Shown: positions 7,949 to 21,198, numbered from the stretch's first letter. The stretch: DNA of 64,000 nucleotides from Hyalangium minutum (GCF_000737315.1 NZ_JMCB01000022.1:1-64000); one strand, 5' to 3'. Numbers and translations are program-made. Notes: generated from the letters alone by a model not told the origin.

Positions 7949-10702
7949 TCAGTTCAGCTCCAGGCCCAGGACGAGCCGCCGCTCCAGGGTGCTGTCGAGG
8001 CGGGACGCCAGCCGTCCCGCCCAACGGGCCTGGGCGCGAGGTGCCAGCAACAGCCGGTAGCGGCCGAGCTGTCCCACCGCGAGGTCCACCTGCAGCGTGC
8101 CTATGGCTTCGTGGGTGATGCCGTCGCCCATGCGCCAGAAGGGCGCGTACTCCGCCTCCAGTCGCACGGCGTTGGCGAGCGAGCCGGGCAAACCGGTGCG
8201 ATGTGAGAGTGAGAGCCGGGGCCCGAGCGCCGGAGCCAGGACGCCGGGCCCCCAATGCATTCCCGCCTTCATCCCCGCGCCCAGCACCGTGAAGTGGCGG
8301 AAGCGAGGCCCCTCGGACACCACCGCGAGCGCCTCGGCGAGGGCCGTCGCACGATATGGGACCGCGCGCTCCCGCTGGGTCTCCATCTGGGCCGCCATTC
8401 CCCACCCGAGCGCGTCTCTCACCGAGCGCTGGTGGATGGGCAGCTCGCGCATGAGGGTGCGGTAGCCCACCAGGGTGAACCGGGAGCTGAGCACCCGAGG
8501 GACCCCCTTCCGCGGCAGGAGCGACAGCTCGCCCTCCAGCGCGCGCAGCTCGCTCCCCGACTGGAAGCCGTGCAGGCGCGCATCTCCCAGCGACTCACTG
8601 AGCCCGGCGGACTGGAAGACGAGCACCGGCCGGGAGCCTCCTGCCGCTGGGAAGTCCACGCCCATCGCCATCACCATGCGGGCCGCACCCGACCTGACCA
8701 GGGCGCCATCGGCCCAGGCTTGCGCACTCTCCACTTTCTGGCGGTGGTCCTCCGCGAGGAAGGTTCCTGGATCCACGCTGGCCAGCGCTCCCTCCTGCAG
8801 CGCGCCCTGGGCCTCGGTCGAGGCAATGAACGCGGCCTCCGTCACCTCCGCCTGCTCCAGGATGCGCAGCTCCTCGGAAGTCGCCGGGCGCCGCGGGGCC
8901 TTGGCGAGTGCCTCTTGAAGCAGGCTGATCCGATCGAGCACCGCCAGGCGGCGCTGCAGCTCGTCCTCCCGCTCGAACTGGCGCTGGCGGTCCCGTACGC
9001 CCTCGGCCGCGGAGGGGACTCGCACGCGCACGGCGAGGACGCGGTTCCGTTCGATCTCCAGCTTCTCGCCCTCCGCACGGTCCGCGGCGCCTCGCTCCAC
9101 GCGGACCGACCAGGCCATGTAGGCGTGGAGCTGTCGGCGGACCTCGTCCACCTGCTCGGGAGGCACCGCCTGGAGCAGCTCCGTGAGGACCTCGGGCATC
9201 CTTATATAGGTAGCGCGGCGCACCTCGGGGCTGGCCGAGCGCAGGCGCCAGTGCAGCAGCCGCAGCCGGGCGCGCGCCGCGGACGGCAGTTGGGCGGAGA
9301 GCCCGCTCAGGAGCTCCTCGCGCGACACATGCGCCCGCTCCGCCCGGGCTTCGGTGGACTCGAAGTCATCCGGGATGTACTCGAGGAGCGGCTGGGTCTC
9401 GCCCCCAGGAGCCTCCACCTCCACGCGGGAGATCATGTCCAAGGCAGCGGCGGGCAACACCCAGAGCGAGCCGGGCAGCCGCACCTTGCGGCCTCCTTCG
9501 AGCGCTCCATTGAGAAGGAAGACCAGCGCGCTTGCGCAGTTCTCGGTGAAGAAGCGGTAGGGGAAGTAGCCGCGCCGCTCCAGCTCCCAGATGCGCTCCA
9601 GAAGCCGCACCTGCTCAGTGGGAGTGAGCCGCAGTCGGAAGCGGCGCACGGAGCGCTGCTCCAGCTCCATCGTCTCGTGAGACACCTCTCCCATCGTCGT
9701 GGTGAGGAAGCCCGTGTCGTAGCCCCCGAGCAATCCCTTGAGGGAGTACTGCAGCCCGCGCGCCTCCAGCCCGGTGAGCGCCACCAGCTGCACCACCGGC
9801 GCGAACCCTGGCCCGCGAGGCACGGCGCCCTCGCGCCATACGGGGCGCAGCATCAGGTGGCCGAAGAGGGACTCGGGCTGCCGTCCCGACGCGGCCGCCA
9901 TCATCACCTCGAAGTGGGTGAGGTTCTCCAGCTCTGCCCAGGTGTCGAAGGCCGGGCAGCGCCCGCGCGGTGGCAGGGAGGCGAGCCCCTCGGCGGCGAG
10001 GCTCTCCGAGAGCGCCCGGGCCTTGGAGAACTCCTGGCAGCGCACCTGATCGTCCACGCCAAGCGCGTCGGGACGCAGGGACTCCACGGGGGCGAGCAGC
10101 TCCTCGGCGAAGGTGACGAGATCCAGCGACGCGCTCACCTGCCCTCTCGCGCGGCTGAAGGCGCCCGCGTAGCGCATGAGCACCTCCTCGTGGAAGGTGA
10201 ACAAGCGCTCGAAGGGCCCGACCCACCCATTCAGGCGGCGCCAGCGCGGGCCCTGGCTCCAGCCCCGCGCGTCATCCCAGCGCTGAACCACGGCATGCAC
10301 CACGGCGCGGCGGCGCCACAGCCGCTCGGCCTCCTCGTCCGTCAGGCGCGAGAGCCGGAAGGTCGCGCGCCGCTCCTTGGAAGGCGCGTAGCGATAGAGG
10401 TGAAAGCGCTGGTGGCCCTCGGTCCACTCCGGCCGGGTGACACTCCCATCACCCAGGCCCAGGGGAGAGGACTCACGGTGCAGTTCCAGTTCCAAGAGGC
10501 CACCCGGCGGACGGCGCAGCGCAGGAGGAAGCGAGGCCAGGCCCGCTTCGATCTCCGCTACGAGCGCCGCGTCCCAGGCCTCACGCGGACGCAGCACCAC
10601 GCCATGCTCCGCTTCCAGCGCGGCGATGCGCTCGGACAGAGGAAGCTCGGCACCGGCCGGGAGCGCCCCTAGCAGAACGCTCACCAGCGCCAGGAGCCTC
10701 AC
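7949..10702 (-). CDS. DUF4105 (Lnb-like) domain protein with probable C-terminal beta-barrel
   Basis: Signal peptide; FGHLMLR and YRFFTENCAS motifs typical of DUF4105; C-terminal alternating beta-strand pattern. Confidence 0.8.
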   Translation of the reverse strand: MRLLALVSVLLGALPAGAELPLSERIAALEAEHGVVLRPREAWDAALVAEIEAGLASLPPALRRPPGGLLELELHRESSPLGLGDGSVTRPEWTEGHQRFHLYRYAPSKERRATFRLSRLTDEEAERLWRRRAVVHAVVQRWDDARGWSQGPRWRRLNGWVGPFERLFTFHEEVLMRYAGAFSRARGQVSASLDLVTFAEELLAPVESLRPDALGVDDQVRCQEFSKARALSESLAAEGLASLPPRGRCPAFDTWAELENLTHFEVMMAAASGRQPESLFGHLMLRPVWREGAVPRGPGFAPVVQLVALTGLEARGLQYSLKGLLGGYDTGFLTTTMGEVSHETMELEQRSVRRFRLRLTPTEQVRLLERIWELERRGYFPYRFFTENCASALVFLLNGALEGGRKVRLPGSLWVLPAAALDMISRVEVEAPGGETQPLLEYIPDDFESTEARAERAHVSREELLSGLSAQLPSAARARLRLLHWRLRSASPEVRRATYIRMPEVLTELLQAVPPEQVDEVRRQLHAYMAWSVRVERGAADRAEGEKLEIERNRVLAVRVRVPSAAEGVRDRQRQFEREDELQRRLAVLDRISLLQEALAKAPRRPATSEELRILEQAEVTEAAFIASTEAQGALQEGALASVDPGTFLAEDHRQKVESAQAWADGALVRSGAARMVMAMGVDFPAAGGSRPVLVFQSAGLSESLGDARLHGFQSGSELRALEGELSLLPRKGVPRVLSSRFTLVGYRTLMRELPIHQRSVRDALGWGMAAQMETQRERAVPYRATALAEALAVVSEGPRFRHFTVLGAGMKAGMHWGPGVLAPALGPRLSLSHRTGLPGSLANAVRLEAEYAPFWRMGDGITHEAIGTLQVDLAVGQLGRYRLLLAPRAQARWAGRLASRLDSTLERRLVLGLELN

Positions 10703-11577
10703 CGGCTCAGCTCCCCTGCCTCGTACGCCGCCAGGAACGCGCGCCGGTCCTCCTCCAGCCGAGGATCCGTGGAGGCAAGCTCACCCACCCGCCGCATCCA
10801 CTCCACCGCACGCTCGGGCGTCAGTGCACGCGTGTCCGCCAGGGCCAACAGCTCCTGACGGTGGGCGCGCAACAGCCGGCCGAACACACTCAGGTTCTCA
10901 CGGCGGATGCGCGCCAGGGAGGCCAGCTCCTCGATGGTGGGCCCTGCCCCCAGCGCCAGGTCCTCGCGAAGCTGGTGCGTGCGAGAACGCAGATACGTCT
11001 GCGCGGCCCGGGAAACCTCCTGAGGCGGAGGCGGCGGCGCGGACGAAGGAGGTGGCTCCCTCATGGCGCGATGAGCAGCCTGCCAGAACACAGCGCCCAG
11101 CCCAGCTGCGGTGAGGCCGATGACAGTGGCCGAGGCCAAGGGGTTGTTGTTCTCGCCGCTCGTCCTCGAGTTGGAGTCGCCCGACGAGTTGTCGGAGTTC
11201 GAGTTGGCATCACCCGACGAGCCGCCCGACGAGTTGTCCGACGAGTTGTCGGAGTTCGAGCCCGCGTCACCCAACGAGTCATCCGACGAGTTGCCCGAGT
11301 CTGAGTTGGAATCCCCCGACGAGTTGCCCGAGTCCGAGTTGGAGTCGCCCGACGAGTTCCCAGACCCATCCGACGAGTTCCCGGAATCCGAGTTCGACCC
11401 GTCCGACGAAGCCCCCGAGTCCGACGAAGCCCCCGAGTCCGACGAATCCGCGGCGAAGGCCCCGGTCTCCGAGGCACTGTACTGCCGAGGCCTCATCACT
11501 CCGGGTGTCTGGCAACCTGACACTGTGAGGCAGACAGCCACTCCCCAGCAAGCCGCGCTCTTCTTGAGTGTTTTCAT
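10699..11577 (-). CDS. Lipoprotein with Ser/Asp/Gly repeat linker and DUF3015-like C-terminal domain
   Basis: Start reassigned to ATG 11577 (MKTLKK...VSGC lipobox); YLRSRTHQLREDLALGAGPTIEELASL resembles DUF3015; 4-nt overlap with the DUF4105 gene. Confidence 0.65.
   Translation of the reverse strand: MKTLKKSAACWGVAVCLTVSGCQTPGVMRPRQYSASETGAFAADSSDSGASSDSGASSDGSNSDSGNSSDGSGNSSGDSNSDSGNSSGDSNSDSGNSSDDSLGDAGSNSDNSSDNSSGGSSGDANSNSDNSSGDSNSRTSGENNNPLASATVIGLTAAGLGAVFWQAAHRAMREPPPSSAPPPPPQEVSRAAQTYLRSRTHQLREDLALGAGPTIEELASLARIRRENLSVFGRLLRAHRQELLALADTRALTPERAVEWMRRVGELASTDPRLEEDRRAFLAAYEAGELSR
11170..11450 (-). repeat. Intragenic imperfect tandem repeats encoding (G)DSNSDxxNSS and SSDSGA
   Basis: 18-nt unit TCCGACGAAGCCCCCGAG twice near 11402-11437; 33-nt CCGACGAGTTGCCCGAGT...GAGTTGGA units near 11283-11350; all in frame. 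Confidence 0.85.
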
Positions 11578-11676
11578 AGGTCGCCCCCCTGTTTGATAGA
11601 AAGGGGACATACTGGATCCCGCGACCCTGGATGAAGCGTTGGTTGACCTGTTCCCTCCCTGCCTACACATCCCCTG

Positions 11677-12087
11677 ATGCACGCCAGGCTCCAATCCCTT
11701 CAGGAAGACCACTCGCGGCTGCGAGCCCTGCTGCGAAATTGCGAGACTGCGGGCCCGAGAGAACTGGCTGCGGCCTTGCGCCGCCTGGAGGAGGTCTTCG
11801 TTCCCCACCACCAGGCCAAGCTGGCGCTCTATGACGCGACGCTTCAGGGCTTCCAGCAGGAGGGAGACAAGACGAGCGTCTCGGTCCTCACCATCTTCCG
11901 CGCGAACATGCGGGTGATGTCCGCGGCCATCATGGGCTTCCTTCAGTCCCCGGATCCGGATCCTGCCCGGTTCCATGAGCGCTTCCGCGCCGTGGCCTCC
12001 TCGCTGCGCTCGATGCTCACCACCGAGGAGAAGGTCGTCTTCCCGCTCTGCATCCGCTACGCCCAGCGGTCGGAGGTCCAGTCATGA
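11677..12087 (+). CDS. Hemerythrin/HHE-like four-helix protein with degenerate metal ligands
   Basis: LQEDHSRLRALL and EEKVVFP hallmark segments; several His/Glu ligands absent. Confidence 0.65.
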   Translation: MHARLQSLQEDHSRLRALLRNCETAGPRELAAALRRLEEVFVPHHQAKLALYDATLQGFQQEGDKTSVSVLTIFRANMRVMSAAIMGFLQSPDPDPARFHERFRAVASSLRSMLTTEEKVVFPLCIRYAQRSEVQS

Positions 12088-12773
12088 GCGGCAAGCTTCC
12101 CGAAGATCTCTCGGTCCTGGACGATGGAGCGCGGCTCCAGACCTTCGATGGAGGACTGCTCGACCGGACGCCGGACCCCGAGCTGGAGCGGCTGGTGGCC
12201 CGGGCCGCGGAGGTGAGCGGCTTCCCCATCGCGCTGGTGTCGCTGGTGGTGGATCAGATCCAGTTCTTCCGGGCGCACGTGGGGCTGCCGCCGGATCTGC
12301 GCGCGTCGCTCGCCACGGACCGCTGCACCTCGTTCTGCCAGTTCGTGGTGGCCGGGGATCGGCCCCTGCACATCGAGGACGCCCGGCAGGTCGCGGAGCT
12401 CCCCACGGATCTGGTGGAGCGCTACGGCATCCGCGCGTACGTGGGCTTCCCGCTGCGCGTCCAGGGGAAGACCGTGGGCTCCCTCTGCGTCATCGACGTG
12501 AAGCCCGGCACGCTGGCGCCGGAGAGGCTCGAGGAACTCTCGCGGCTGGCGGAGGCCGCGCGCACGCGCCTGGAAGTACTCGCCTCGAAGTGGGCGCCTC
12601 CCGCGAACGCCGCGGAGGAGAAGTCCCACCGCGCGTGGATGGCGGTGGCCGAGTCCCAGTCGCTCGCCAGCCTGGGCGAGCAGTTCGCCGAGGGGCGGCT
12701 CACGTTCGAGGAGTTCCAGCGCGGGCTTGGCGCGCTGGCGTCCTTGGCTGGCAGGCTCGAGCAGAAGCCCTGA
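12084..12773 (+). CDS. Stand-alone GAF domain protein
   Basis: LERLVARAAEVSGFPIALVSLV, SFCQFVV, IRAYVGFPL, GSLCVID; ATGA overlap with upstream gene. Confidence 0.85.
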   Translation: MSGKLPEDLSVLDDGARLQTFDGGLLDRTPDPELERLVARAAEVSGFPIALVSLVVDQIQFFRAHVGLPPDLRASLATDRCTSFCQFVVAGDRPLHIEDARQVAELPTDLVERYGIRAYVGFPLRVQGKTVGSLCVIDVKPGTLAPERLEELSRLAEAARTRLEVLASKWAPPANAAEEKSHRAWMAVAESQSLASLGEQFAEGRLTFEEFQRGLGALASLAGRLEQKP

Positions 12774-12782
12774 GGGGCGCCG

Positions 12783-14375
12783 TCACACGAAGCGGAAGTA
12801 CGCCTCGAAGTCCGGCGTCCCCTTGCGGCGCTGGCCGTTGGGTCCCACCTGGGGCAGGTAGTTGGCCAGCACGTTCGCGGTGTCGGGCTCCTCCAGGCTC
12901 CCGAGCGGTACGGGCAGGTGCTCGCGGATGTCCGGCAGGCCCACCACGTTGCCCAGCACGCGCGGCAGCGTGCGCGGGTCCACCATCTGGCCCGCGGTGA
13001 GCTCGGGCTCGGAGACTTCGTCCAGCGCGTCGTGCAGCGTCTCGCGCTCCGCGCCCTCCAGCCGATAGGCCTTGAAGACGCGCAGCAGCGACAGCCCCAC
13101 CGCATGCGCGGTGAGCGTCAGGTGCACGGGGTTGGTGCCCAGGTTGTCGTCTCCGTAGCAGCGCCAGACGAAGCCGGTGGCGCTCTGGACCCACAGGCCC
13201 TGGACGTTCTCCTCGTCGTGCATCTTCCGCGTGGGCAGCGCGCCCGGCAGCCCCACGAGCGCATCCCTCGGCACGCGGAGGTGACCCGAGGCGAAGGCAT
13301 CCGTGAGGAAGTGATCCGCGAAGGCGTTGCGCACCAGCGCCGCGTCCAAGTCCCTGTCGAGCGCCAGCCGCAGGGCCTCCGCATGGTGCACCAGGTAGCG
13401 CGACCAGCTCCGGGGCGCGAAGTGGTCCTGGTTCTCATTGGCCAGCGAGGCGTAGTCGAACCAGCCCCGGTGGGTGTTGAGCAGGAAGGTGCCCTCGTCA
13501 TGGGGCGTCACACTGCGGATGGCCTTGGCCACGGCCGGGGTCACCTCCGCGGCCAGCTCCTCCGGCGTGGCGTAGTAGTCCCCCGCCAGCGCCACCACAT
13601 CGCCATAGGTGAGCGTGAGGCCGGGGCGGACTTCCAGCTCCGTGAGCGGGCGGTAGTTGGCCATGAGGTTCTCGAGCCGGGCCTGGAAGGGCTCTCGCCA
13701 GGACGGCTCCGCGCTGGCCACGGAGAGGCGGGAGCGCTCGATCACCGCGTCGGGCGCGAGCTCCGGGTTGGCCACGCGCAGCAGCACATGCGTTTGCCTC
13801 CCGACGGCCTTGGGGAAGACGGCCTCGCCCTTGAGCATGCGATCCAGCTGCTCGGCGGAGGCCCGGTGCTCGGAGGTGCCGAAGTAGTCCGGCCGCACCA
13901 TGGCGGAGGTCCGCTTCGACGTCTCCTTGCGCAGGGCAGCGAGCCGATCGCGCTCCCGCTGCTCGAGCTTCTTCGGATCCTCGGCGGGCCTACCTGCGTC
14001 CATGAGACCTCCTCTCAAGCCCAGTGACACCCCTCGAGGCGCGGCGGGACGCGGCCTCGGCGGCGCGGGCTGCTGGGACATGACTGCCTCGAACCCCCGG
14101 CGAGCCACCTGGCCCCGCATCACGGAGGCCTCTGCCGAGCGCACCTGGTCGGGCGGAGGCAGCTCGGAGGTGCGGCTGCCGAACGCCAGGGGCGCTCCTG
14201 AGGGCGAGCCCTCCAGGACCGCCGGGGGCGTGGCCGCGGCGGGAGCCTTGCGCGCAGGCGCCTTGCGAGCCCCCCGAGCCTTCTTGCTCGCCGGACTCTT
14301 GCTCTTCGCTGGGCCTCTTCCCTTCGACTTGCTCGAAGCGCCTCGGCCGGTGCCTCGGGGCTTGCGTGCACTCAT
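12783..14375 (-). CDS. Zinc metallophospholipase C (Legionella PlcA/PlcB-like) with basic disordered N-terminal extension
   Basis: LAGDYY, NQDHF, AFADHFLTDAFASGH, MHDEEN and YGDD motifs. Start reassigned to ATG 14375, overlapping the upstream stop (ATGA). Confidence 0.75.
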   Translation of the reverse strand: MSARKPRGTGRGASSKSKGRGPAKSKSPASKKARGARKAPARKAPAAATPPAVLEGSPSGAPLAFGSRTSELPPPDQVRSAEASVMRGQVARRGFEAVMSQQPAPPRPRPAAPRGVSLGLRGGLMDAGRPAEDPKKLEQRERDRLAALRKETSKRTSAMVRPDYFGTSEHRASAEQLDRMLKGEAVFPKAVGRQTHVLLRVANPELAPDAVIERSRLSVASAEPSWREPFQARLENLMANYRPLTELEVRPGLTLTYGDVVALAGDYYATPEELAAEVTPAVAKAIRSVTPHDEGTFLLNTHRGWFDYASLANENQDHFAPRSWSRYLVHHAEALRLALDRDLDAALVRNAFADHFLTDAFASGHLRVPRDALVGLPGALPTRKMHDEENVQGLWVQSATGFVWRCYGDDNLGTNPVHLTLTAHAVGLSLLRVFKAYRLEGAERETLHDALDEVSEPELTAGQMVDPRTLPRVLGNVVGLPDIREHLPVPLGSLEEPDTANVLANYLPQVGPNGQRRKGTPDFEAYFRFV

Positions 14376-15346
14376 GGAAGTCCTCCGTCGATGCCTTGCA
14401 GGCGCACGCCCAGCTTGATGCTGGCCAGCACGTGCGCGGGGCGATTCGGAACGACGTACGCCACCTGAAGCGTGCTGCCCACGCGAGGCGCACCTCGGCG
14501 CGTGGGCGACAGGTTCTCCCGCGCATAGGCGCACTGCGCGAGGAACACGCAGTAGTCCACCGCCGCCTGCAGGGAGAAGTGCTCGGAGAGCGGCTCCTGC
14601 GCCGGAGAGAAGAACGCCGCGCGCAGCACGCGCCGCGCATAACGCCGGGACAGCGCCTGGGCATCTGCGTTGGACAGGGGCAGGGAGGGAGTGCCCGTCC
14701 GGCGCGCCTCCTGGGCCAGCTGCTCCAGCAACCCAGGCGGCGCATCCTCCGCGTCCGTGCCCGCCAGCAACACCGCCAGCTTCTCGGGCAGCGCCGGGTC
14801 GAATCCCTCGACGAAGCGGGCCACGGCCTCCGTCACCCCGGCATAGTGGACGCCGAAGGCGTGCTTGATGTCGCTCCCATCCTCCTCGGTGTGGAGGATG
14901 GGCGTGGGCGTGGTGGGAATGTTGGGGTCCACGCTCCACTGGATGGACCAGAGGGTGGGCGGCTCCACGCCCTCCTTCGGCGGGGGCGCGAAGCCTCCAA
15001 TGATGAGGTGGAAGGGACGCGGCAGCGCCCCCAACTTGCGGAGGGCCTGGGCCTCCAGCTCCACATGCAGCCGCCGCGCGTAGTCTCCCACGGACTCGCC
15101 CTCTCGCAGGGGCGCTCGGTCATCGAAGGCGCGCAGCGAGGTGGCCACTGTCCCGCCGCCAATCGAGCCCACCCCGTTGAACATGGCGAGCAGCCGGTCG
15201 TGGGACAGCGGCACCAGCTTCTCCACGTTGGCCATGTTCGAGAGGAAGCGCTCCTGGCCACGGCCATCCACCTCCATCACCGTGGCGAGCCCGTCCGTAG
15301 CGAACACGAGCGCATCGGGCGTCTTGAAGGCGATGTCGATGGTCAT
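14372..15346 (-). CDS. Proteasome-beta-like N-terminal nucleophile hydrolase
   Basis: After Met removal: Thr1, Asp17 (FATDG), EKL Lys, NGVG; C-terminal SLQAAVDYCVFL and RVGSTLQVAYV. Confidence 0.65.
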   Translation of the reverse strand: MTIDIAFKTPDALVFATDGLATVMEVDGRGQERFLSNMANVEKLVPLSHDRLLAMFNGVGSIGGGTVATSLRAFDDRAPLREGESVGDYARRLHVELEAQALRKLGALPRPFHLIIGGFAPPPKEGVEPPTLWSIQWSVDPNIPTTPTPILHTEEDGSDIKHAFGVHYAGVTEAVARFVEGFDPALPEKLAVLLAGTDAEDAPPGLLEQLAQEARRTGTPSLPLSNADAQALSRRYARRVLRAAFFSPAQEPLSEHFSLQAAVDYCVFLAQCAYARENLSPTRRGAPRVGSTLQVAYVVPNRPAHVLASIKLGVRLQGIDGGLP

Positions 15347-15657
15347 GGCGCCCCCTCAGCATACAAGGACAGGGGACTTCTCCCCGGCCGCACAAAAGGC
15401 AACGCGCGTCAGGCCTGGTGGGACCTGGCGCGCGTCTGATGGGACAGCAGACCTTTGAAAGTGGCCCTCCCCCCCGGCGAGCCGATAAGTAGTTTCTCGC
15501 CGATGAGCCATTAGATTCCATGCGTGGAACCCCTGAGGTCGGGTAACACCTGGAAAGCTATTAACTTCCAAGAATCTGAGAGACGACACATGGAGTGATT
15601 TGGACCCACCGGTGCATCCAGTTGTCACGCAAACCCGTATACTCGGAAATCGTGAAT

Positions 15658-16773
15658 ATGTTCGATTCCAGGGACAAGGGCCTCATTGCGGACCTCCAAG
15701 GCCGGTTGGACACGGTCGAGCCGGGGGCAGATGTGCTCCACGGGTTGATGGACGGTCTCCGGGAGGGACTGCGCGCGGAGCGGATGGTGGCCTACGGCGT
15801 GGAGCTGGCGCCGGACCATTACGCGGCCAGCTTCTGCCACAGCGCGGGCTTTCCGCAGCCGCAGGGAGAGCTGCTCGGCACCCTCAACGGCTTCCTGCGC
15901 CAGCAGCCCAACCCTTGGGGTTACTTCGATCCCGCACGTCCCGCTGCCGCGCAGCGCAACCGGGCGCTGCACTTCCGGCCTCACGAGGAGACGGAGACGC
16001 GGGAGACGCCGCTGCATGATCTGAAGGCCGGGGCGTGGCGGCGGCTGGGCATTGGGCCCACGGAGGAGGCCCGGGTCCGTGAGCGGGTGACCGGGGGTAC
16101 GGTGACCCTCTACCGCCAGTTGAAGATGGAGCACATGTTCCAGCTTCGGGCGCTCGTGTGCGAGGGCTCCACGCTGCTGGCGTGGGTGGGCGCGCTGCGC
16201 TCGGAGCCGTTCACGCCTCGCGAGCAGCGGCTGCTCCAGGAGCTGGTGCCCTCGCTGCAGCGGCGGCTGGAGCTGGAGACGCGGCTGCGGGAGGCAGGGC
16301 TGCTGGGCTCGGCACTGGAGGCGGCGCTGGAGGCACTCGGGCAGCCGGCCTACGTGCTCTCCTCCAAGGGGCGGGTGGTGTACGCCAACAGCGCGGGGCG
16401 GGCCCTGGCGGAGCGCGCCTCTCCGTCGCTGGCGGAGATCATCCGCCGGCATGGCCAGGGCGAGCCCCCGCCTCCCGGTACTTCCGTCACCGCACTGCAG
16501 GTGCGGGGACTGTCTCCCCACTACCTGGTGGTGGATCGCAGCACGGAGGCACAGGCAAGCGCCCGGGTCCACGTGCTGGCCAGCCGCTGGGGGCTGACGG
16601 TGCGCGAGGCCGAGGTGCTCGAGCACATCATCCAAGGCACGAGCAACAAGGCCATCGCGGCGCGGCTGGGCTGCGCGGAGCGCACGGTGGAAGTGCACGT
16701 CACCCACGTGCTGAGCAAGGCCCAGGTGGAGAGCCGCTCGGCGCTCATCGCGAAGTTCTTCCAGGCGACCTAA
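15658..16773 (+). CDS. LuxR-family HTH transcriptional regulator with uncharacterised N-terminal sensor region
   Basis: C-terminal LTVREAEVLEHIIQGTSNKAIAARLGCAERTVEVHVTHVLSK; start at ATG 15658. Confidence 0.88.
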   Translation: MFDSRDKGLIADLQGRLDTVEPGADVLHGLMDGLREGLRAERMVAYGVELAPDHYAASFCHSAGFPQPQGELLGTLNGFLRQQPNPWGYFDPARPAAAQRNRALHFRPHEETETRETPLHDLKAGAWRRLGIGPTEEARVRERVTGGTVTLYRQLKMEHMFQLRALVCEGSTLLAWVGALRSEPFTPREQRLLQELVPSLQRRLELETRLREAGLLGSALEAALEALGQPAYVLSSKGRVVYANSAGRALAERASPSLAEIIRRHGQGEPPPPGTSVTALQVRGLSPHYLVVDRSTEAQASARVHVLASRWGLTVREAEVLEHIIQGTSNKAIAARLGCAERTVEVHVTHVLSKAQVESRSALIAKFFQAT

Positions 16774-16832
16774 GAAGCCGTCCTCGGCAGAGAAAACATG
16801 CGGGCGGCAGAGCCCGTGTTTAGGATGCACGG

Positions 16833-17987
16833 GTGACGTCACCTCGCCTCCAGGCCGCGCTGGATCGGGCCGCCGCCTGCGCGTCAGGGGCTCCCCGCTC
16901 CGCGCCCCCCGAGTCCTCTCCTCCCGAGCGGCGACTGCGGGTCGCCATCGGAGATCCGCAGGCGGACCTCACGCGCTTCCTGGCCATCCTGGACCACCAC
17001 GGCCTGCTGACGGAGCAGGGATGGCTGCGTCCGGAGGTGCAGCTGGTGTCGGTGGGGGACCACTTCGACTGGGGCAAGGCACCCGAGCGGGAGGCCGTGG
17101 CCCAGAGCGCCCTGCGGCTCGTGGCGTGGCTCGCGGCGCATCCGCCCGATCAGGCGGTCATCCTCGCGGGGAACCATGATCTCGGGCGCGTGGGAGAGCT
17201 GGCGGAGTTCAGCGATGCCACCTTCGCCGAGGCCCAGCGGGAGGCGGATGCCCTCTACGACGGCGACGACACGGACGAGATGCGGGAGCGGGCCTTCCTC
17301 GGCCGGTTTCCGCAGGTGCCTACCGTGGAGCTGGTCGCGCGGGACTTCAGCACGTTCCGGGAGGAGCAGCGCACGTGGATCACCCACCTCCTCCGGGAGC
17401 GCCGCCTGCGCACAGCGTATGCGGCCGGACCGGAGCTGCTCGTCCTGCACGCAGGGGTGACGCGGGAGGACCTGGCGGCCGCCGGTGTCTCCGAGGAGCA
17501 CGCCGCGGATGCCCCGCGGATAGCGGCCGCGTTGAACGGGGCGCTCGATGCGGCGGTGGATGTCTGGAAGGGCGGACGGCTTATTGTCCCCCAGCTGCAC
17601 CACCCGGGCAGCGCGGACTATGGCGAGGGCCGAGGCATCTTCTACCACCGCCCGAGCCTCCACCCAGACGATGCCGAGCGCACGCGTGTCACGCCTCGCC
17701 GCCGCTTCGATCCGAGGCGTCTGCCCGCGGGGCTGACACAGGTGGTGGGGCACACGCGGGACAAGCGCAGCCGCGAGCTGCTGGGCCTGCCGGGAGAGGT
17801 GCGAGACGGAGTGCTGCGGCACCTCGTGACGGACGGGGAGCGCATCGCCTACGCGCACGGCACTCCCGCGAAGCTCGGTTCTCGGGAAGCCGCGCTCATC
17901 TTCACCGATGGCGGCATGGGCCACGCGCGGGTCGAGGCCTATGAGCTGCTGGACCTCGACACCCGCATGGCGGCACAGCCGCGATAG
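16833..17987 (+). CDS. Calcineurin-like metallophosphoesterase
   Basis: GDPQA, GDHFDWG, GNHD, LHAG and VGHT motifs. Confidence 0.85.
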   Translation: MTSPRLQAALDRAAACASGAPRSAPPESSPPERRLRVAIGDPQADLTRFLAILDHHGLLTEQGWLRPEVQLVSVGDHFDWGKAPEREAVAQSALRLVAWLAAHPPDQAVILAGNHDLGRVGELAEFSDATFAEAQREADALYDGDDTDEMRERAFLGRFPQVPTVELVARDFSTFREEQRTWITHLLRERRLRTAYAAGPELLVLHAGVTREDLAAAGVSEEHAADAPRIAAALNGALDAAVDVWKGGRLIVPQLHHPGSADYGEGRGIFYHRPSLHPDDAERTRVTPRRRFDPRRLPAGLTQVVGHTRDKRSRELLGLPGEVRDGVLRHLVTDGERIAYAHGTPAKLGSREAALIFTDGGMGHARVEAYELLDLDTRMAAQPR

Positions 17988-17998
17988 CCCGGCCGTGC

Positions 17999-19354
17999 CT
18001 ACTTTGCCTTCAGCTCCGTGAGCTTCTTCTCCAGGGCCTCACGCTGGCGCGGGGACACCTGGGCCTCGGACAGTGACTTGGCGTAGGCAATCGCCTCTTC
18101 GATCGTCTTTACGGCACCGGCCTTATCCCCGCGAGCGGCCAGGATGGCCGAGCGGTCCGAGAGGACTCGCAGCCGCCGCGCACCCTGAACCTTCGCCAGG
18201 GCCCGATCGCTGGCGGCCATCGCGTCATCCAGCCGCCCCAGCATCCGGTAGAGCACGGCCAGCCGAGCGGGCGGATTGTAGTCGTTGGGGAGATCCTTCT
18301 CGCTCTGCTCGATGGCCGGGACCGCGCGCATGGGCTCTTCGAGGATCATCGCCGCGGACATGCGGTGCGAGTCGAAGACGGAGCGTGCATCGGGGTTGGG
18401 GGCCTTGGCGGCCTCAGCCTCGAGGAACGTGAGCCACTCCTGGGCCAGGGCCTTGCCTCCAGCCTCGTCGCCCAGCTCGGACCGGCCCTCGACCATGGCC
18501 TCATAGAGGCCGGAGCGGTCATCCGCGGGCATGTCAATGAGTGGAGGCGCGAGGATCTCCTTCCCCTTGGCATCGAACGCGCTCAGCAGGGCCTTGCGCT
18601 GCGGATTCTCCGGAGCCATTGAGGCCGCGCAGCCGATGGCCATGGTCGTCGCGTTGGCCAGGGACGGCGAGCGCGGCAAGCGTGGCAGCTCTTCGGCCGC
18701 CTTCTGCGCGCAGACGTCGTACTGCTTCGCGCCCCATAGGGCGACCAGCAGCGACTCCACCGTCCGGCCCCGGCGGGACCAGTCGTGCGGAGCCTCGGCG
18801 AGCGCCTGGGAGAAGGCTTGTGCTGCCTCGGCCGGCTTGCCTGCGCCATAGAGCGCATCGCCCCGGGCCAGGTCGGCCTCGGCGCCCTTCGCGTCACCGC
18901 GGTAGGCACGTTCTCCATCCTCGAAGAGCTTCTCGAGCTGCGCCACGGTGGCGCTGCCCGCGAAGCGCACGAGGGCCTTCTCCTCCCTCGGGTCGATGAT
19001 GAAGAAGGTAGGCCAGTTCTCGACCGGGTACTTCTCCTGAAAGATGGCGTTCTTCGGAAGGTCCGTGTTGATCTCGAGCCAGACGAACCGTCCGGCGTGC
19101 CGCGCGAGCGCCTTGTCCGTGAAGACGTAGGCCCGCATCGAGCGGCAGGTGTGACACCACGGGGCCCAGATGTCGGCGAAGAGGGGCAGCCCCTTCGCCT
19201 TGGCCTCCGTGAGCGCACGGTCGTAATCATCCTCGATGAACGGCAGCGGGGCTCCCTCATGGGCAGCGGCCGCGGTGGCATCGGGCTCGGAGGTGCGCGA
19301 GGCGGTGCAGGCCAGGAGCCCCACGACGAACAAGCTGGCAACGTGGGTACGCAT
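17999..19354 (-). CDS. Thioredoxin-fold lipoprotein with TPR-like repeats
   Basis: Lipobox LLAC; WAPWCHTC CxxC; WPTF cis-Pro loop; helical repeats downstream. Confidence 0.85.
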   Translation of the reverse strand: MRTHVASLFVVGLLACTASRTSEPDATAAAAHEGAPLPFIEDDYDRALTEAKAKGLPLFADIWAPWCHTCRSMRAYVFTDKALARHAGRFVWLEINTDLPKNAIFQEKYPVENWPTFFIIDPREEKALVRFAGSATVAQLEKLFEDGERAYRGDAKGAEADLARGDALYGAGKPAEAAQAFSQALAEAPHDWSRRGRTVESLLVALWGAKQYDVCAQKAAEELPRLPRSPSLANATTMAIGCAASMAPENPQRKALLSAFDAKGKEILAPPLIDMPADDRSGLYEAMVEGRSELGDEAGGKALAQEWLTFLEAEAAKAPNPDARSVFDSHRMSAAMILEEPMRAVPAIEQSEKDLPNDYNPPARLAVLYRMLGRLDDAMAASDRALAKVQGARRLRVLSDRSAILAARGDKAGAVKTIEEAIAYAKSLSEAQVSPRQREALEKKLTELKAK

Positions 19355-19449
19355 GGCGGAGGACCATAGCGTCGTCCCTGCGCTGTGTCCCCTATGGACA
19401 GAGGGGCGAAGAAGAACTGGGCGCGGCGGGCGGTGCGTGCTGTGCTCCG

Positions 19450-21198
19450 GTGAACGCGATGATTGCTCTGCCCGCGCTGCGCGCTGTCCTGGAGTCTGCC
19501 CTCGCCGCCCTGCCCTCGCCCGAGCGCTTTCCTCGGGGCGAGGATGCGGAGGCCGCGCGGCGCCTCACCGAGCGCCTGCGCCGGGATTTGCTGCCCCGAC
19601 TGGGCGGAGACGCACCGCTGCTGCTGGTGGCCATCGCGGGGCCCAACAACGTGGGCAAGTCCACGCTCTTCAACTCACTCGTGGGGGCCGCGCTGTCTCC
19701 AGCGCGGCCGGAGGGAGGCCTGACGAAGCAGTGCCTTGCAGCGGCCCACCCGGAGACGTGGACAGGCGAGCTGAAAGAGTTCCTCACCCGCCGCTACGAC
19801 GTCGTCCCGGTGGCGCCGGGTGCGGATGCTCCCGTGGACCAGCCCGGCCCGGCGGGACGGCTCTACCTGGCGCTGGCGGAGGCCGTACCTCGGGGGCTGC
19901 TGGTGATGGACACGCCGGACTTCGACAGCGTGTACCGGGACAACCGCGAGCGCACCGAGGCGCTGCTCGTCACGGTGGACGTGCTCGTCTTCGTGGTGAG
20001 CCGGCAGACGTACCAGAACGCGGCGCTGGTGGACTTCCTGCGCGCGGCGGTGGGACGCGGCCGACCCTACCTGATCATCTATAACGAGGCCACGCGCGAA
20101 GAGGTTGCTCGGGGCCACCTGGACAAGCTGGCCTCGGATGTGGGGCACCCACCGCTGGCGCGCTACCTCGCGCCTCACCAGCCGGAGGTGGAGGCGGGGC
20201 AACGCCCGTTGGCCACACAGCCGCTGGACGGCGGACCCTCGCTCGGCGCGCTTCTGGGAGAGACCGAGCACGCCCGGAAGCTCAAGGCGCAGGCGCTGGC
20301 CGCCTCGCTTGCGGATGCACGCGCGGAATTGGAGACCCTGTCCCGGGCCGCACGGGAAGCCGCGCACGAGCCCGAGCGGTTGCGACAGCGGCTGCGCCAC
20401 GAGCTGGCGGCAGTAGGCAAGAGCGCAGCGCTCAAGGGAGTGCCCGCGGATGTGCTGGTGGACGCGTTCCGGGACGAGCTGGATGCGCGCAGCTCCTTCC
20501 ACCGTTACGTGCGGCTGCCTTTCCGAGCGGTTGCCACGGCGCTGACGTTCGTCTCGCGGAAGGTGCGCGAGTCCTTCACAGGCCCGCAGCCCACGGCGGC
20601 CCCGGTGCTCCATGCCACGGACGAGACGCTGCGGGACGGCATGCGGCGGCTGGTGGACGTGCTCGCTCCAGAGGTAGCGGCGTGGCACGGCGACGCCAGC
20701 ACACGGGCGAAACTGTCGGAGTCCTTCGGTCCGGGGACACTGGCACGGCTGGAGGAGCCGCTGGGCTTCGAGGCGCTGCATGCGCACGCGGCGGATCGCG
20801 AGAGCCTCTACACGTTCTGCCGGAGCCTGGTGGGCGCGGAGCTGCAGGGGAGCATGCGCGAGGAGCTGCTCCAAGCGCTCACCACATTGGTGTACTCGGT
20901 GCCCTCGGGGGCGGCAGCGGTGGTGACAGTGGCCACCGGCGGTGTGGGGCACGACGCCGTCATCTGGGCGGGTACCCTGCTGTCCACACCGCTGTTGGAG
21001 CGCTTCGTGGATCTGCTGGGAGCGGACATCCGCGCTCACGTCACGCAGAAGTGGGCGGACGCCCACGGCGCCACCCTGGCCCGAGCCCTGGAGAAGCGCT
21101 TCTTCCAGGAGGTGCTGACGCACCTCGACACGGAGGCTACCGGCTGGGTCCGCACGACCCAGGTTCTGGAGGAGAGCGCCCGAAGGCTCGCGGAGTAG
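19450..21198 (+). CDS. Dynamin-like / YfjP-type GTPase
   Basis: G1 GPNNVGKS, G3 DTPD, long helical stalk, hydrophobic C-terminal segment. Confidence 0.85.
   Translation: MNAMIALPALRAVLESALAALPSPERFPRGEDAEAARRLTERLRRDLLPRLGGDAPLLLVAIAGPNNVGKSTLFNSLVGAALSPARPEGGLTKQCLAAAHPETWTGELKEFLTRRYDVVPVAPGADAPVDQPGPAGRLYLALAEAVPRGLLVMDTPDFDSVYRDNRERTEALLVTVDVLVFVVSRQTYQNAALVDFLRAAVGRGRPYLIIYNEATREEVARGHLDKLASDVGHPPLARYLAPHQPEVEAGQRPLATQPLDGGPSLGALLGETEHARKLKAQALAASLADARAELETLSRAAREAAHEPERLRQRLRHELAAVGKSAALKGVPADVLVDAFRDELDARSSFHRYVRLPFRAVATALTFVSRKVRESFTGPQPTAAPVLHATDETLRDGMRRLVDVLAPEVAAWHGDASTRAKLSESFGPGTLARLEEPLGFEALHAHAADRESLYTFCRSLVGAELQGSMREELLQALTTLVYSVPSGAAAVVTVATGGVGHDAVIWAGTLLSTPLLERFVDLLGADIRAHVTQKWADAHGATLARALEKRFFQEVLTHLDTEATGWVRTTQVLEESARRLAE

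What the first reader, a model, noticed from the sequence alone, without database searches (positions are those of the whole stretch)
12783..15346. Coupled two-gene operon: proteasome-beta-like Ntn hydrolase plus Zn-phospholipase C
Seen: 14372..15346 begins M-T-I-D-I-A-F-K-T-P-D-A-L-V-F-A-T-D, placing Thr1 and Asp17 exactly as in proteasome/HslV beta subunits, with a Lys (EKL) after a short insertion. Its stop overlaps the ATG of a PlcA-like phospholipase (ATGA, 14372-14375). No ATPase partner and no Anbu-type transglutaminase/ATP-grasp neighbours are present. Inference: a protease-gated effector module in which the Thr protease processes or activates the lipase. It could act in anti-phage abortive infection, programmed lysis or predation. 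I know of no described system with this pairing.
Basis: partly seen in the sequence, partly recalled or inferred. Interest (0 to 1): 0.7.

Follow-up and report, generated by a model that had tools for sequence, protein, structure and literature searches.

The report
Proteasome-like protease coupled to phospholipase C
A myxobacterial operon joins an orphan proteasome-family threonine protease to a zinc phospholipase C that carries a long disordered N-terminal extension; the pair is always found together, so the lipase is a concrete candidate partner or substrate for a class of proteasome homologs whose function is unknown.

Summary
Gene A (14372-15346, minus strand, 324 aa) starts Met-Thr. Its Asp18, Lys43 and Gly58 are invariant in homologs. 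Its predicted fold matches 20S proteasome beta subunits (Foldseek probability 1.0), and a family profile aligns to the Thermoplasma beta subunit (hhalign 88.7%).

Gene B (12783-14375, minus strand, 530 aa) starts in the ATGA that ends A. It has no Pfam hit. It is a divergent member of the zinc metallophospholipase C family of Pseudomonas fluorescens PC-PLC/PlcC and Legionella PlcA/B/C. It also keeps the zinc-ligand motifs of classical Zn-PLC and P1 nuclease.

The pair is conserved. In 24 of 24 loci with enough downstream sequence, B follows A directly, down to 43-45% (A) and 35% (B) identity, while the flanking genes change. Distant A-like proteins and Pseudomonas-type PLCs lack the partner.

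Neither protein has a signal peptide, an ATPase partner or a defence-island context.

Best model (inferred, not shown): A is a specific convertase that removes B's 164-residue basic, disordered N-terminal extension, perhaps at VRPDY|FGTSEH. This resembles Mpl activating Listeria PlcB.

Both families are already known. The pairing appears undescribed. I rate it a new variant of a known kind, of moderate interest.

The parts
14372..15346 (-). Gene A: 324-aa proteasome-family Ntn (Thr) hydrolase with no propeptide. It has a 9-10 residue insertion before the catalytic Lys and a ~70-residue three-helix insertion (about residues 181-258) between core helices H3 and H4.
   Evidence: ORF and translation. 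AF2 model pLDDT 74. Foldseek against PDB gives 386 hits at E<=1e-3; all 50 listed are 20S proteasome subunits, best E 1e-6, probability 1.0. hhalign to T. acidophilum beta gives 88.7%, E 2.6e-6, and to HslV E 2.8e-4.
15341..15343 (-). Codon of Thr2, the predicted N-terminal nucleophile once Met1 is removed.
   Evidence: T2 is nearly invariant in 30 homologs, with one Ser. It aligns with HslV Thr1. No upstream start codon is possible.
15218..15295 (-). Stretch from the Asp18 codon (15293-15295) to the Lys43 codon (15218-15220), equivalent to proteasome Asp17 and Lys33. It includes the S3/S4 insertion VMEVDGRGQE.
   Evidence: D18 and K43 are invariant in A1 and in the 53-sequence A4 alignment. 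hhalign aligns them to E17/K33 of T. acidophilum beta and to D17/K33 of HslV.
14372..14375 (-). ATGA overlap: the stop codon of A and the start codon of B share these bases (translational coupling).
   Evidence: Read directly. An ATGA or GTGA overlap is seen in most related loci.
14381..14386 (-). GGAGGA ribosome-binding site for B, inside the 3' end of A.
   Evidence: Read directly from the sequence; 5-nt spacer to the ATG.
12783..14375 (-). Gene B: 530-aa zinc metallophospholipase C of the P. fluorescens PC-PLC / Legionella PlcA-C family.
   Evidence: Translation. phmmer E 1.3e-19 to the Pseudomonas-type PLC cluster P0096. BLASTP 2e-21 to P. protegens 'phospholipase'. Source names and the family link (PMC2613904). 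Foldseek top hits are B. cereus PC-PLC, alpha-toxin and Listeria PlcB, but weak (E 0.23).
13884..14375 (-). B residues 1-164: a mostly disordered N-terminal extension. It is Lys/Arg/Ala/Pro-rich, with net charge +23 over residues 1-165, and holds a conserved P-[RL]-[GA]-[FY]-x-[ST]-R motif and two predicted helices. This is the proposed propeptide or regulatory arm.
   Evidence: pLDDT is below 50 over 1-79, 112-128 and 152-163. Composition and charge. The architecture is conserved in A-associated homologs and absent from Pseudomonas-type relatives.
13866..13898 (-). VRPDY|FGTSEH: the junction between the extension and the catalytic domain. F165-x4-H170 has the same spacing as W1-x4-H6 of P1 nuclease. 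This is the candidate processing site (speculative).
   Evidence: Translation. Tyr at position -1 occurs in 26 of 27 A-associated sequences but is variable in 11 non-associated ones. P0098 and P0109 start with Met exactly at the position of the aromatic residue.
13281..13313 (-). HFLTDAFASGH: the H355-x3-D359-x5-H365 metal-binding motif, with the same spacing as H118/D122/H128 of B. cereus PC-PLC.
   Evidence: Translation. The residues are invariant across the family. The ligand positions were checked on the validated 1AH7 sequence.
15595..16773 (+). Divergently transcribed LuxR/GerE-type regulator. It is a possible local regulator of the pair and is context only.
   Evidence: Pfam GerE 1.5e-17. 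The same arrangement occurs in Stigmatella aurantiaca but not in Polyangia-type loci.

Best explanation
A and B form a dedicated two-protein module in the cytoplasm of Archangiaceae-type myxobacteria.

A is an active, ATPase-independent threonine protease of the proteasome family, made without a propeptide. Thr2 becomes the N-terminal nucleophile once Met1 is removed. A carries insertions before the catalytic Lys and between helices H3 and H4. In connectase and the PMI-type proteasome homologs, insertions at these sites are thought to confer substrate specificity and to prevent barrel assembly.

B is a zinc metallophospholipase C of the PlcA/PlcC / P. fluorescens PC-PLC family. It is made with a 164-residue basic, disordered N-terminal extension.

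I propose that full-length B is a latent pro-enzyme and that A is its cognate convertase. A would cut within or at the end of the extension, most specifically at VRPDY|FGTSEH. That cut would free the alpha-amino group of Phe165 to complete the tri-metal site, as Trp1 does in classical Zn-PLCs and P1 nuclease. The active PLC would then cleave membrane glycerophospholipids to diacylglycerol.

Shown: the identity of both proteins, conservation of their catalytic residues, strict coupling of the pair, and the clade-specific extension and junction motif.

Inferred: that A cleaves B, the site of cleavage, the direction of the effect (activation rather than destruction), and the physiological role (membrane remodelling or lysis during development or predation).
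For: Protein A:
- Fold and active-site residues match the proteasome family.

Protein B:
- It belongs to the PLC family, and its His/Asp residues are invariant.
- Lecithinase activity of relatives is reported in PMC2613904, and Zn2+-dependent PLC activity of Legionella PlcC is summarised in PMC7025538.
- Its motifs map one by one onto the Zn ligands of 1AH7.

Coupling:
- B lies immediately downstream of A in 24 of 24 checkable loci, usually with an ATGA/GTGA overlap, while the flanking genes differ.
- The partner is missing from distant A-like proteins and from Pseudomonas PLC loci.

Why A should act on B:
- An ATPase-less proteasome homolog can only attack unfolded chain, and B's only long disordered segment is the N-terminal extension.
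- That extension, and Tyr at -1 of the junction motif (26 of 27 versus variable), are specific to the A-associated clade.

Precedent:
- In Listeria PC-PLC, any residue added before W1 abolishes activity, W1F remains active, and the protease Mpl removes the 26-residue propeptide (PMC10576769; PMC2132530).
Against: No experiment or complex prediction links A to B.

Equimolar translational coupling fits a stoichiometric complex or a toxin-antitoxin-like pair better than an enzyme and its substrate.

The 385-aa Pseudomonas PlcC has about 17 residues before the equivalent Phe and was reported as secreted 'without cleavage' (PMC2613904, by SDS-PAGE mass only). A free N-terminus at that position may therefore not be required in this family.

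The structural link between B and classical Zn-PLC is weak: Foldseek E 0.23, no hhalign or Pfam signal.

The region around F165 is poorly modelled (pLDDT 42-55).

The equivalents of S129/D166/S169 in A (T172/E277/S280) come from my manual mapping, not from a tool alignment.
Confidence: 0.35

Rival explanations
1. Guardian or antitoxin model. A keeps B harmless in the producer cell, either by continuously degrading or clipping it through its disordered arm or by binding it one-to-one. B acts only when A is lost or inhibited, or when B leaves the cell. That would make the pair a kill switch for developmental lysis or abortive infection, or a self-protection device for an exported predation effector.
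For: The gene order (small upstream 'antidote', downstream effector) and the 4-nt overlap resemble type II toxin-antitoxin architecture and imply equimolar synthesis. The same PLC core occurs as the C-terminal module of DUF4157/PF13699-type toxin-like proteins. Relatives in Pseudomonas and Legionella are secreted effectors, some without any signal peptide (PMC2613904; PMC7025538). A is more conserved than B (85-92% versus 63-84% identity among the near-full-length close homologs).
Against: There is no defence-island or mobile-element context. The locus is syntenic with Stigmatella and has native GC content. PADLOC gave no hit. I know of no protease of this family that serves as an antitoxin. 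The junction motif conserved exactly at the start of the catalytic domain fits precise maturation better than bulk degradation.
Confidence: 0.2
2. Stable complex without proteolysis of B. A forms a ring or other oligomer, and B docks on it through its extension, occupying the operon position that HslU holds next to HslV. B would then recruit A to the membrane or deliver substrates. Alternatively, A works as a connectase-like sequence-specific ligase or transpeptidase on B or on a third protein.
For: Translational coupling implies 1:1 stoichiometry. Connectase shows that a proteasome homolog with an S3/S4 insertion can be a specific ligase (PMC8665760). B's +23 arm could bind anionic membranes.
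Against: B has no ATPase or unfoldase features. No third conserved gene exists in the neighbourhood. There is no evidence for a ligation motif.
Confidence: 0.12
3. The two genes are co-transcribed but functionally independent. A is a general quality-control protease for disordered proteins and B is an ordinary lipid-turnover enzyme.
For: Fuchs et al. suggest that orphan proteasome homologs may act without dedicated partners (PMC8665760). The functions of both genes are otherwise unknown.
Against: Strict adjacency persists in 24 of 24 loci through 43-45% and 35% identity while all other neighbours change. The start-stop overlap is conserved, and clade-specific features in B co-vary with the presence of A.
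Confidence: 0.1
4. Consecutive lipid catabolism. B removes the phospho-head group from a (sphingo)phospholipid, and A, acting as an Ntn amidase rather than a protease, hydrolyses the amide bond of the product (ceramidase-like activity). A minor variant: B is an S1/P1-type nuclease rather than a lipase.
For: The wider Ntn clan includes lipid amidases and phospholipase B (PMC8665760). From my own knowledge, myxobacteria make sphingolipids. The F-x4-H spacing and the metal motifs are shared with P1 nuclease, and S1/P1-type nucleases appear among the weak Foldseek hits.
Against: A keeps the full Thr1/Asp17/Lys33/Gly47 signature of the proteasome branch, whose characterised members all act on peptide bonds. 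B's closest characterised relatives are phospholipases C (PMC2613904).
Confidence: 0.06

Closest known systems
PMI-type proteasome homologs (probably PMI-5), or PHD, of Fuchs, Alva & Lupas 2021 (PMC8665760)
   Same: A bacterial proteasome-like protein with no propeptide, Thr1/Asp17/Lys33/Gly47 conserved, an insertion between S3 and S4 and a helical insertion between H3 and H4, and no AAA+ partner. PMI-5 is a small family (19 sequences at 90% identity) reported only from Proteobacteria, which then included the myxobacteria. Stigmatella aurantiaca, which carries the pair, was in the public databases before that survey (genome record CP002271; the date is from my own knowledge).
   Different: The authors reported no informative genomic context; the strict coupling to a PLC is new information.
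Listeria monocytogenes Mpl / PlcB (PC-PLC) proenzyme activation
   Same: A zinc PLC is made as an inactive pro-form. Its N-terminal extension must be removed by a protease encoded at the same locus (from my own knowledge; the papers read do not state it). The residue at the new N-terminus (W1; F is tolerated) is essential, and any added residue kills activity (PMC10576769; PMC2132530).
   Different: Mpl is a secreted thermolysin-type metalloprotease, and activation happens outside the cytoplasm. The Listeria propeptide is 26 residues, not 164. That PLC is a classical PF00882 enzyme. Here the protease is a cytoplasmic proteasome-family Thr hydrolase, and cleavage has not been shown.
Zinc metallophospholipase C family of P. 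fluorescens PC-PLC/PlcC and Legionella pneumophila PlcA, PlcB and PlcC/CegC1 (Preuss 2001; Aurass 2013; PMC2613904)
   Same: B shares the catalytic core (44% identity over 114 residues, BLASTP 2e-21) and all family-invariant His/Asp residues. The family also has fungal members, as its published description says.
   Different: B has a basic disordered N-terminal arm and a ~60-residue insertion after the EH motif, and it lacks the ~70-residue insertion of the Pseudomonas type. It has no secretion signal or known secretion route. It is paired with a protease, whereas Pseudomonas loci have only a 63-aa downstream ORF.
HslVU
   Same: A Thr1 protease encoded first in a two-gene operon, with Met-Thr at the N-terminus and no propeptide. 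The N-terminal 58 residues align (hhalign E 2.8e-4).
   Different: There is no HslU or any AAA+ partner. A is 324 aa against 176 aa for HslV and carries two insertions. The downstream gene is a lipase.
Connectase (archaeal proteasome homolog acting on MtrA)
   Same: A proteasome-fold enzyme with an insertion at the S3/S4 site that acts on one specific partner protein rather than as a bulk protease. This is the model for how A may work.
   Different: Connectase is archaeal and monomeric and acts as a ligase. Its insertion is a two-helix lid and it lacks helices H1/H2. Nothing indicates ligase chemistry here.

Membership tests
Proteasome-like Ntn hydrolases (20S beta, HslV, Anbu, BPH and the 2021 homologs) | Alpha-beta-beta-alpha Ntn sandwich fold of proteasome subunits | tested here: met
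   AF2 model with pLDDT 74 and pTM 0.65. Foldseek against PDB gives 386 hits at E<=1e-3; all 50 listed are 20S proteasome subunits, probability 1.0, TM (target) 0.41-0.62, 0.56-0.62 for the best. The BFVD library also returns phage proteasome/HslV-like proteins.
Proteasome-like Ntn hydrolases | Thr (or Ser) nucleophile at the mature N-terminus | tested here: met
   Met-Thr sits at the first possible start. T2 is nearly invariant, with one Ser. It aligns to HslV Thr1. Removal of Met1 is assumed, not tested.
Proteasome-like Ntn hydrolases | Asp/Glu17, Lys33 and oxyanion Gly47 | tested here: met
   D18, K43 and G58 are invariant in 30 close and 53 distant sequences. hhalign aligns D18 and K43 with E17/K33 of T. 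acidophilum beta (88.7%, E 2.6e-6), and D18, K43 and G58 with D17/K33/G45 of HslV. The alignment is gapped around G58.
Proteasome-like Ntn hydrolases | Ser129 / Asp166 / Ser169 supporting residues | tested here: inconclusive
   By manual mapping, T172, E277 and S280 are conserved candidates. The tool alignments stop before this region.
Proteasome-like Ntn hydrolases | Peptide-bond hydrolysis; ring or barrel assembly | not testable with these tools
   No multimer prediction or assay was available.
HslVU | Adjacent HslU AAA+ unfoldase; compact ~175-aa subunit | tested here: not met
   No AAA+ domain lies in 7949-23111. A is 324 aa with two insertions.
Anbu | Operon with ATP-grasp, transglutaminase-like and alpha-E proteins | tested here: not met
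   None of these domains is present in the window neighbourhood or in related loci.
PMI-5 (Fuchs et al. 2021) | Insertion between S3 and S4 plus an insertion between H3 and H4; small family restricted to Proteobacteria | tested here: met
   A 9-residue gap falls before K43 in both hhalign alignments. Three extra helices (186-245) lie between core helices. An exhaustive search finds only about 10 representatives at E<=1e-30, all of myxobacterial type.
PMI-5 (Fuchs et al. 2021) | Sequence similarity to the family representative WP_179179973.1 | not testable with these tools
   The sequence is not held. The accession is absent from the clusters I looked up.
PlcA/PlcB/PlcC - P. fluorescens PC-PLC zinc metallophospholipase C family | Significant sequence similarity of the catalytic core to family members | tested here: met
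   phmmer E 1.3e-19 against 5.8 billion proteins. BLASTP 2e-21 with 44% identity to the P. protegens 546-aa PLC. A profile search returns Pseudomonas proteins named 'phospholipase' or 'phosphatidylcholine-hydrolyzing phospholipase C'. The link to the characterised PlcC and to Legionella PlcA comes from Table 3 of PMC2613904.
PlcA/PlcB/PlcC - P. fluorescens PC-PLC zinc metallophospholipase C family | Conserved metal-binding and catalytic His/Asp/Glu residues | tested here: met
   H170, D266, N315, H318, H355, D359, H365, H386 and D409 are invariant, and E169, H331 and D387 are at least 90% conserved, across 15-38 diverse members. The published list of 15 essential residues (Aurass 2013) could not be read.
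PlcA/PlcB/PlcC - P. fluorescens PC-PLC zinc metallophospholipase C family | Zn2+-dependent PLC activity; secretion | not testable with these tools
   No assay was possible. No signal peptide or transmembrane segment was detected.
Classical Zn-dependent PLC / P1 nuclease superfamily (PF00882, PF02265) | Match to the family HMMs | tested here: not met
   B has no Pfam hit. One of 38 relatives hits PF00882 at E 0.019. The PDB profile search found nothing, and hhalign against 1AH7 found nothing.
Classical Zn-dependent PLC / P1 nuclease superfamily (PF00882, PF02265) | All-helical PLC fold | tested here: inconclusive
   The top Foldseek hits are B. cereus PC-PLC, alpha-toxin, Listeria PlcB and the nuclease SmNuc1, but at E 0.23-9 and probability <=0.41.
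Classical Zn-dependent PLC / P1 nuclease superfamily (PF00882, PF02265) | Nine Zn ligands in conserved motifs (W1, H14, D55, H69, H118, D122, H128, H142, E146) | tested here: met
   By inspection: F165..H170, AGD266YY (AAD55Y), DH318F (SH69F), H355-x3-D359-x5-H365 (identical spacing) and H386-D387. The reference sequence was validated. The W1 equivalent is internal, so it would need cleavage.
Known anti-phage defence systems (PADLOC 2.0) | Match of either protein or of the neighbourhood to defence models | tested here: not met
   A and B have no hits. The neighbours give only generic domain hits.

The most novel reading that the evidence does not exclude
A proteasome-family threonine protease that needs no ATPase has one dedicated physiological client, a latent cytoplasmic zinc phospholipase C. 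It controls that client by limited proteolysis of a disordered arm. This would be a self-contained protease-gated membrane-destroying switch (convertase or protease-antitoxin) used in myxobacterial developmental lysis, lipid-body formation or predation. It would also be the first assigned substrate and function for any of the orphan 'new proteasome homologs'.
Probability: 0.2. Interest if true: 0.8.

Novelty: new variant of a known kind. Interest (0 to 1): 0.55.

Why it matters
Twenty-two bacterial and archaeal proteasome homologs were catalogued in 2021 with no functional clue and, explicitly, no informative gene context. This locus supplies one: a strictly conserved, translationally coupled partner that has an obvious protease-accessible arm and a sharply conserved junction motif. 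That turns 'what do ATPase-less proteasome homologs do?' into a simple co-expression and mass-spectrometry experiment.

It also extends the PlcA/PlcC zinc-PLC family, known from Pseudomonas and Legionella virulence work, to a cytoplasmic and probably zymogen-like form in social, predatory bacteria. There, regulated phospholipid breakdown is relevant to developmental lysis and lipid-body formation.

The family is narrow (Archangiaceae-type and a few Polyangia genomes), which limits its breadth of interest.

Tried and rejected
Searches that found nothing for A or B: Pfam, NCBIfam, PADLOC and PHROGs scans and plain PDB sequence searches.

Profile searches against PDB sequences: A1 gave only a spurious ATP-synthase subunit hit. 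A2 gave nothing.

hhalign of the B family against the validated B. cereus PC-PLC sequence gave only a meaningless 16-column match.

hhalign of the narrow A1 profile against the T. acidophilum beta subunit failed. It worked only after distant relatives were added (A4).

I tried to place A in a named 2021 subfamily by accession. The clusters I looked up do not contain WP_179179973.1 or OGP72033.1, and the paper's supplement holds no sequences.

Aurass et al. 2013 could not be read.

P0095, an apparent A-B fusion, is a frameshifted mis-call and not a real fusion.

I considered a C-terminal HbYX-like docking tail in B (YFRFV). I rejected it because the motif is not at a fixed distance from the C-terminus in homologs and is confidently packed in the model.

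The gene upstream of a distant A-like protein (L021) is not a paralogous subunit.

The sigma-70 promoter scan found nothing. The terminator-like hits lie inside coding sequence.

A search for STAUR_0975/0976 in the literature found nothing, as did a search for proteasome homologs in phage defence.


Full report
**What is in the sequence**

On the minus strand, ORF 14372..15346 encodes a 324-aa protein (A) that begins MTIDIAFKTPDALVFATDG. ORF 12783..14375 encodes a 530-aa protein (B) that begins MSARKPRGTGRG. A's TGA (14374-14372) overlaps B's ATG (14375-14373). A GGAGGA run lies 5 nt upstream of B's start, and a GAGGGGG run precedes A's start. The ATG of A is the first start codon after an in-frame stop, so Thr2 cannot be preceded by a propeptide. 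The window has about 70% GC, and the best matches are Hyalangium/Archangiaceae-type myxobacteria.

**Protein A is a proteasome-family Ntn hydrolase**

Sequence libraries did not recognise A. Pfam, NCBIfam, PADLOC, PHROGs and the PDB sequence and profile searches gave nothing.

- **Conservation.** In 30 homologs down to 45% identity, D18, G19, K43 and G58 are invariant. T2 is nearly invariant, with one Ser.
- **Fold.** An AlphaFold2 model (pLDDT 74) matches 20S proteasome subunits. There are 386 PDB hits at E<=1e-3; all 50 listed are 20S proteasome subunits, with probability 1.0 and TM-scores normalised to the target of 0.41-0.62 (0.56-0.62 for the best). Among viral models, the best hits include a phage protein named as a proteasome beta subunit, followed by weaker HslV-like hits.
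- **Alignment to HslV.** The family profile aligns to E. coli HslV over the first 58 residues (E 2.8e-4). T2, D18, K43 and G58 fall on Thr1, Asp17, Lys33 and Gly45, with a 9-residue gap before the Lys.
- **Alignment to the archaeal beta subunit.** A broader profile that includes distant relatives aligns to the Thermoplasma beta subunit over 112 columns with 88.7% probability (E 2.6e-6).
- **Reference check.** I wrote both reference sequences from memory and checked them against the PDB. The Thermoplasma sequence is identical to its entry, and HslV differs at 1 of 176 residues.
- **Insertions.** A carries a short insertion between strands S3 and S4 and about 70 residues of extra helices (186-245) between the core helices. 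By manual mapping, T172, E277 and S280 are candidates for Ser129, Asp166 and Ser169.

**How A relates to known proteasome homologs**

An exhaustive HMM search of 1.84 billion representative proteins found only 114 hits at E<=1e-3, and only 10 at E<=1e-30. The rest are 260-360-aa proteins that also start MT[IF]. The ten scanned have no significant Pfam match.

Fuchs, Alva and Lupas (2021, PMC8665760) described 22 new proteasome homologs. These include the PMI groups ('multiple insertions') and PHD ('of Deltaproteobacteria').

- PMI-5 has an unstructured S3/S4 insertion and an H3/H4 insertion, and is a small family restricted to Proteobacteria.
- A fits that description, so it is probably PMI-5. 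I could not obtain the representative sequences to confirm this.
- The authors state that they found no genomic context or co-occurrence suggestive of function and no AAA+ partner.
- They argue that S3/S4 insertions can confer specificity, as in connectase, and that H3/H4 insertions may prevent double-ring assembly.

**Protein B is a zinc metallophospholipase C of the PlcA/PlcC type**

B has no Pfam, NCBIfam or PDB sequence hit.

- **Homologs.** Its homologs fall into two groups. The close, myxobacterial group includes Stigmatella aurantiaca STAUR_0976, which UniRef names 'Phospholipase C'. From E 1e-19 downward there are more distant proteins.
- **Profile search.** A profile of the catalytic core retrieves 777 proteins. 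The list is headed by Pseudomonas proteins that NCBI names 'phospholipase' or 'phosphatidylcholine-hydrolyzing phospholipase C'.
- **Direct comparison.** B against the 546-aa P. protegens protein gives BLASTP 2e-21, with 44% identity over the core.
- **Link to characterised enzymes.** PMC2613904 reports that the Pf-5 546-aa protein is 76% identical to PlcC of P. fluorescens MFN1032. PlcC is a secreted 385-aa lecithinase without a signal peptide. It is 98% identical to the enzyme characterised by Preuss et al. and 43% identical to Legionella PlcA. Equating the P. protegens protein (P0161) with the Pf-5 protein rests on matching species and length, so it is an inference.
- **Family definition.** Aurass et al. 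[quoted passage not shown] I know that paper only from its title and from summaries in PMC7025538 and PMC10149971. Fungal members also appear in my hit lists.
- **Invariant residues.** E169/H170, D266, N315/H318, H331, H355, D359, H365, H386/D387 and D409 are invariant or nearly so across the family.
- **Match to classical Zn-PLC motifs.** These residues line up with the zinc ligands of B. cereus PC-PLC: AGD266YY with AAD55Y, DH318F with SH69F, and H355-x3-D359-x5-H365 with H118-x3-D122-x5-H128. The reference sequence was validated and the positions checked.
- **Fold.** The AF2 model (pLDDT 75 overall, above 90 over most of the core) finds B. cereus PC-PLC, clostridial alpha-toxin, Listeria PlcB and an S1/P1-type nuclease as its best PDB matches. 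The scores are weak: E 0.23-9, probability at most 0.41.

I therefore file B in the PlcA/PlcC family. Its link to the classical PLC/P1 fold is plausible but not demonstrated.

**The pair is a conserved unit**

I collected loci through exact-protein look-ups and pattern scans of genome and metagenome collections.

- In every locus of the A family proper (43-92% identity) with at least 1.8 kb downstream, B follows directly. That is 23 loci plus the window.
- Loci without B are all cut by a contig end within 700 bp.
- Most loci have an ATGA or GTGA overlap. A Polyangia-type lineage has a gap of about 100 nt.
- In the most divergent lineage, A is 45% and B is 35% identical to the window proteins, and the overlap is still kept.
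- Flanking genes differ between lineages. Within Archangiaceae, the window is syntenic with Stigmatella aurantiaca DW4/3-1: LuxR-type regulator, phosphoesterase, thioredoxin-TPR protein and GTPase.
- Distant A-like proteins sit in unrelated contexts, including serpins, HicAB and others.
- Pseudomonas PLC genes have only a small 63-aa downstream ORF.
- A is more conserved than B among close relatives: 85-92% against 63-84% among the near-full-length close homologs.

**Cellular setting**

Neither protein has a signal peptide or a transmembrane segment. Neither protein matches a defence-system or phage family. The neighbours give only generic-domain or weak PADLOC matches. GC content is uniform. 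Nothing supports the anti-phage idea.

**What distinguishes the A-associated lipases**

All of them carry an N-terminal extension of up to about 165 residues.

- It has a Lys/Arg/Ala/Pro-rich head, a short conserved P-[RL]-[GA]-[FY]-x-[ST]-R motif, two predicted helices and low model confidence.
- In the window protein, the net charge of residues 1-165 is +23, against -14 for the rest.
- The extension ends in VR[PS][DE]Y-FG[TS]xEH. Tyr at the position before the aromatic residue occurs in 26 of 27 A-associated sequences, while the 11 non-associated relatives have seven different residues there.
- The aromatic-x4-His spacing is that of Trp1-x4-His6 in P1 nuclease (my recollection of the P1 structure).
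- Two relatives (P0098, P0109) begin with Met exactly at the aromatic position.

In Listeria PC-PLC, the N-terminal Trp1 must be exactly positioned, W1F is tolerated, one added residue abolishes activity, and the protease Mpl removes the 26-residue propeptide (PMC10576769; PMC2132530).

**Most likely mechanism**

I propose that B is made as a latent pro-enzyme and that A is its dedicated convertase. Lacking an unfoldase, A can only attack disordered chain, and B's extension is the one long disordered segment made alongside it. Cleavage after Tyr164 would suit a chymotrypsin-like proteasome-type active site and would expose Phe165 as the new N-terminus.

The steps shown are the identities of the two proteins, their catalytic residues, the coupling, and the clade-specific extension and junction motif. 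The cleavage itself, its site, its effect and the physiological role are all inferred. I put this at about 0.35.

The main rival (0.2) reverses the sign. In that model A keeps B harmless, like an antitoxin or guardian. This fits the equimolar coupling, the gene order, and the use of the same PLC core in DUF4157-type toxin-like proteins.

Other rivals are listed with their tests:
- a non-proteolytic complex or connectase-like ligase;
- mere co-transcription;
- a lipid-amidase role for A;
- a nuclease role for B.

**Caveats**

- The 385-aa Pseudomonas enzyme has about 17 residues before the equivalent Phe and was reported as uncleaved, though only from gel mobility.
- Both AF2 models are of moderate confidence.
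- No complex prediction could be run.

**Novelty and verdict**

Both protein families are already described, and protease-activated phospholipases are a known kind. The new element is the strict, conserved pairing of an orphan proteasome homolog with a PLC that carries a matching disordered arm. I found this pairing nowhere in the literature searched.

I rate it a new variant of a known kind, with interest 0.55. It is narrow in taxonomy, but it gives a direct experimental handle on an open question about proteasome homologs.

Noticed in passing
window 10699-11976 (-), likely true start near 11577: A lipoprotein-like gene (MKTLKKSAACWGVAVCLTVSGCQ) with a long Ser/Asp/Gly/Asn low-complexity run (SSDSGASSDSGASSDGSNSDSGNSS..., about 11100-11500) and a sub-threshold DUF3015 match.
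   Followed up: partly
window 11677-12087 (+) and 12084-12773 (+): A hemerythrin gene overlaps a GAF-domain gene by ATGA. This pair converges on the 3' end of B with only about 9 bp between the stops. A hemerythrin gene also lies near the A-B pair in the Polyangia locus L001.
   Followed up: no
window 21381-23111 (+): A HAMP plus class III nucleotide cyclase protein hits PADLOC PycC models (7e-34). This is probably a generic cyclase-domain match rather than a Pycsar system. A dynamin/GTPase-like gene lies just upstream (19450-21198).
   Followed up: no
proteins P0104, P0111, P0112, P0114: The same PLC catalytic core occurs at the C-terminal side of DUF4157/PF13699-type proteins and fused to OmpA. 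This looks like deployment as a toxin or effector module.
   Followed up: partly
proteins P0103 (Chaenotheca) and P0211 (Auricularia): Fungal members of the PLC family, in line with the published description of the family as present in bacteria and fungi.
   Followed up: no
proteins P0236-P0338; loci L007, L019, L021, L022: About 100 representative clusters of 260-360-aa proteins start MT[IF]..K..G.V.A.DS and are distantly related to A. The ten scanned have no significant Pfam match. Their contexts vary: two serpin genes downstream in L007, HicAB and large unknown proteins in L019.
   Followed up: partly
loci L039 and L040 (Pseudomonas): The Pseudomonas PLC genes are each followed, after 11-13 nt, by a conserved 63-aa ORF of unknown function.
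   Followed up: no
protein P0095: A 625-aa database entry that looks like an A-B fusion is an out-of-frame or frameshifted gene call, not a real fusion.
   Followed up: yes
window 7949-10702 (-): A 917-aa protein with an Lnb_N periplasmic domain. The long antisense ORFs throughout this region are high-GC artefacts.
   Followed up: no
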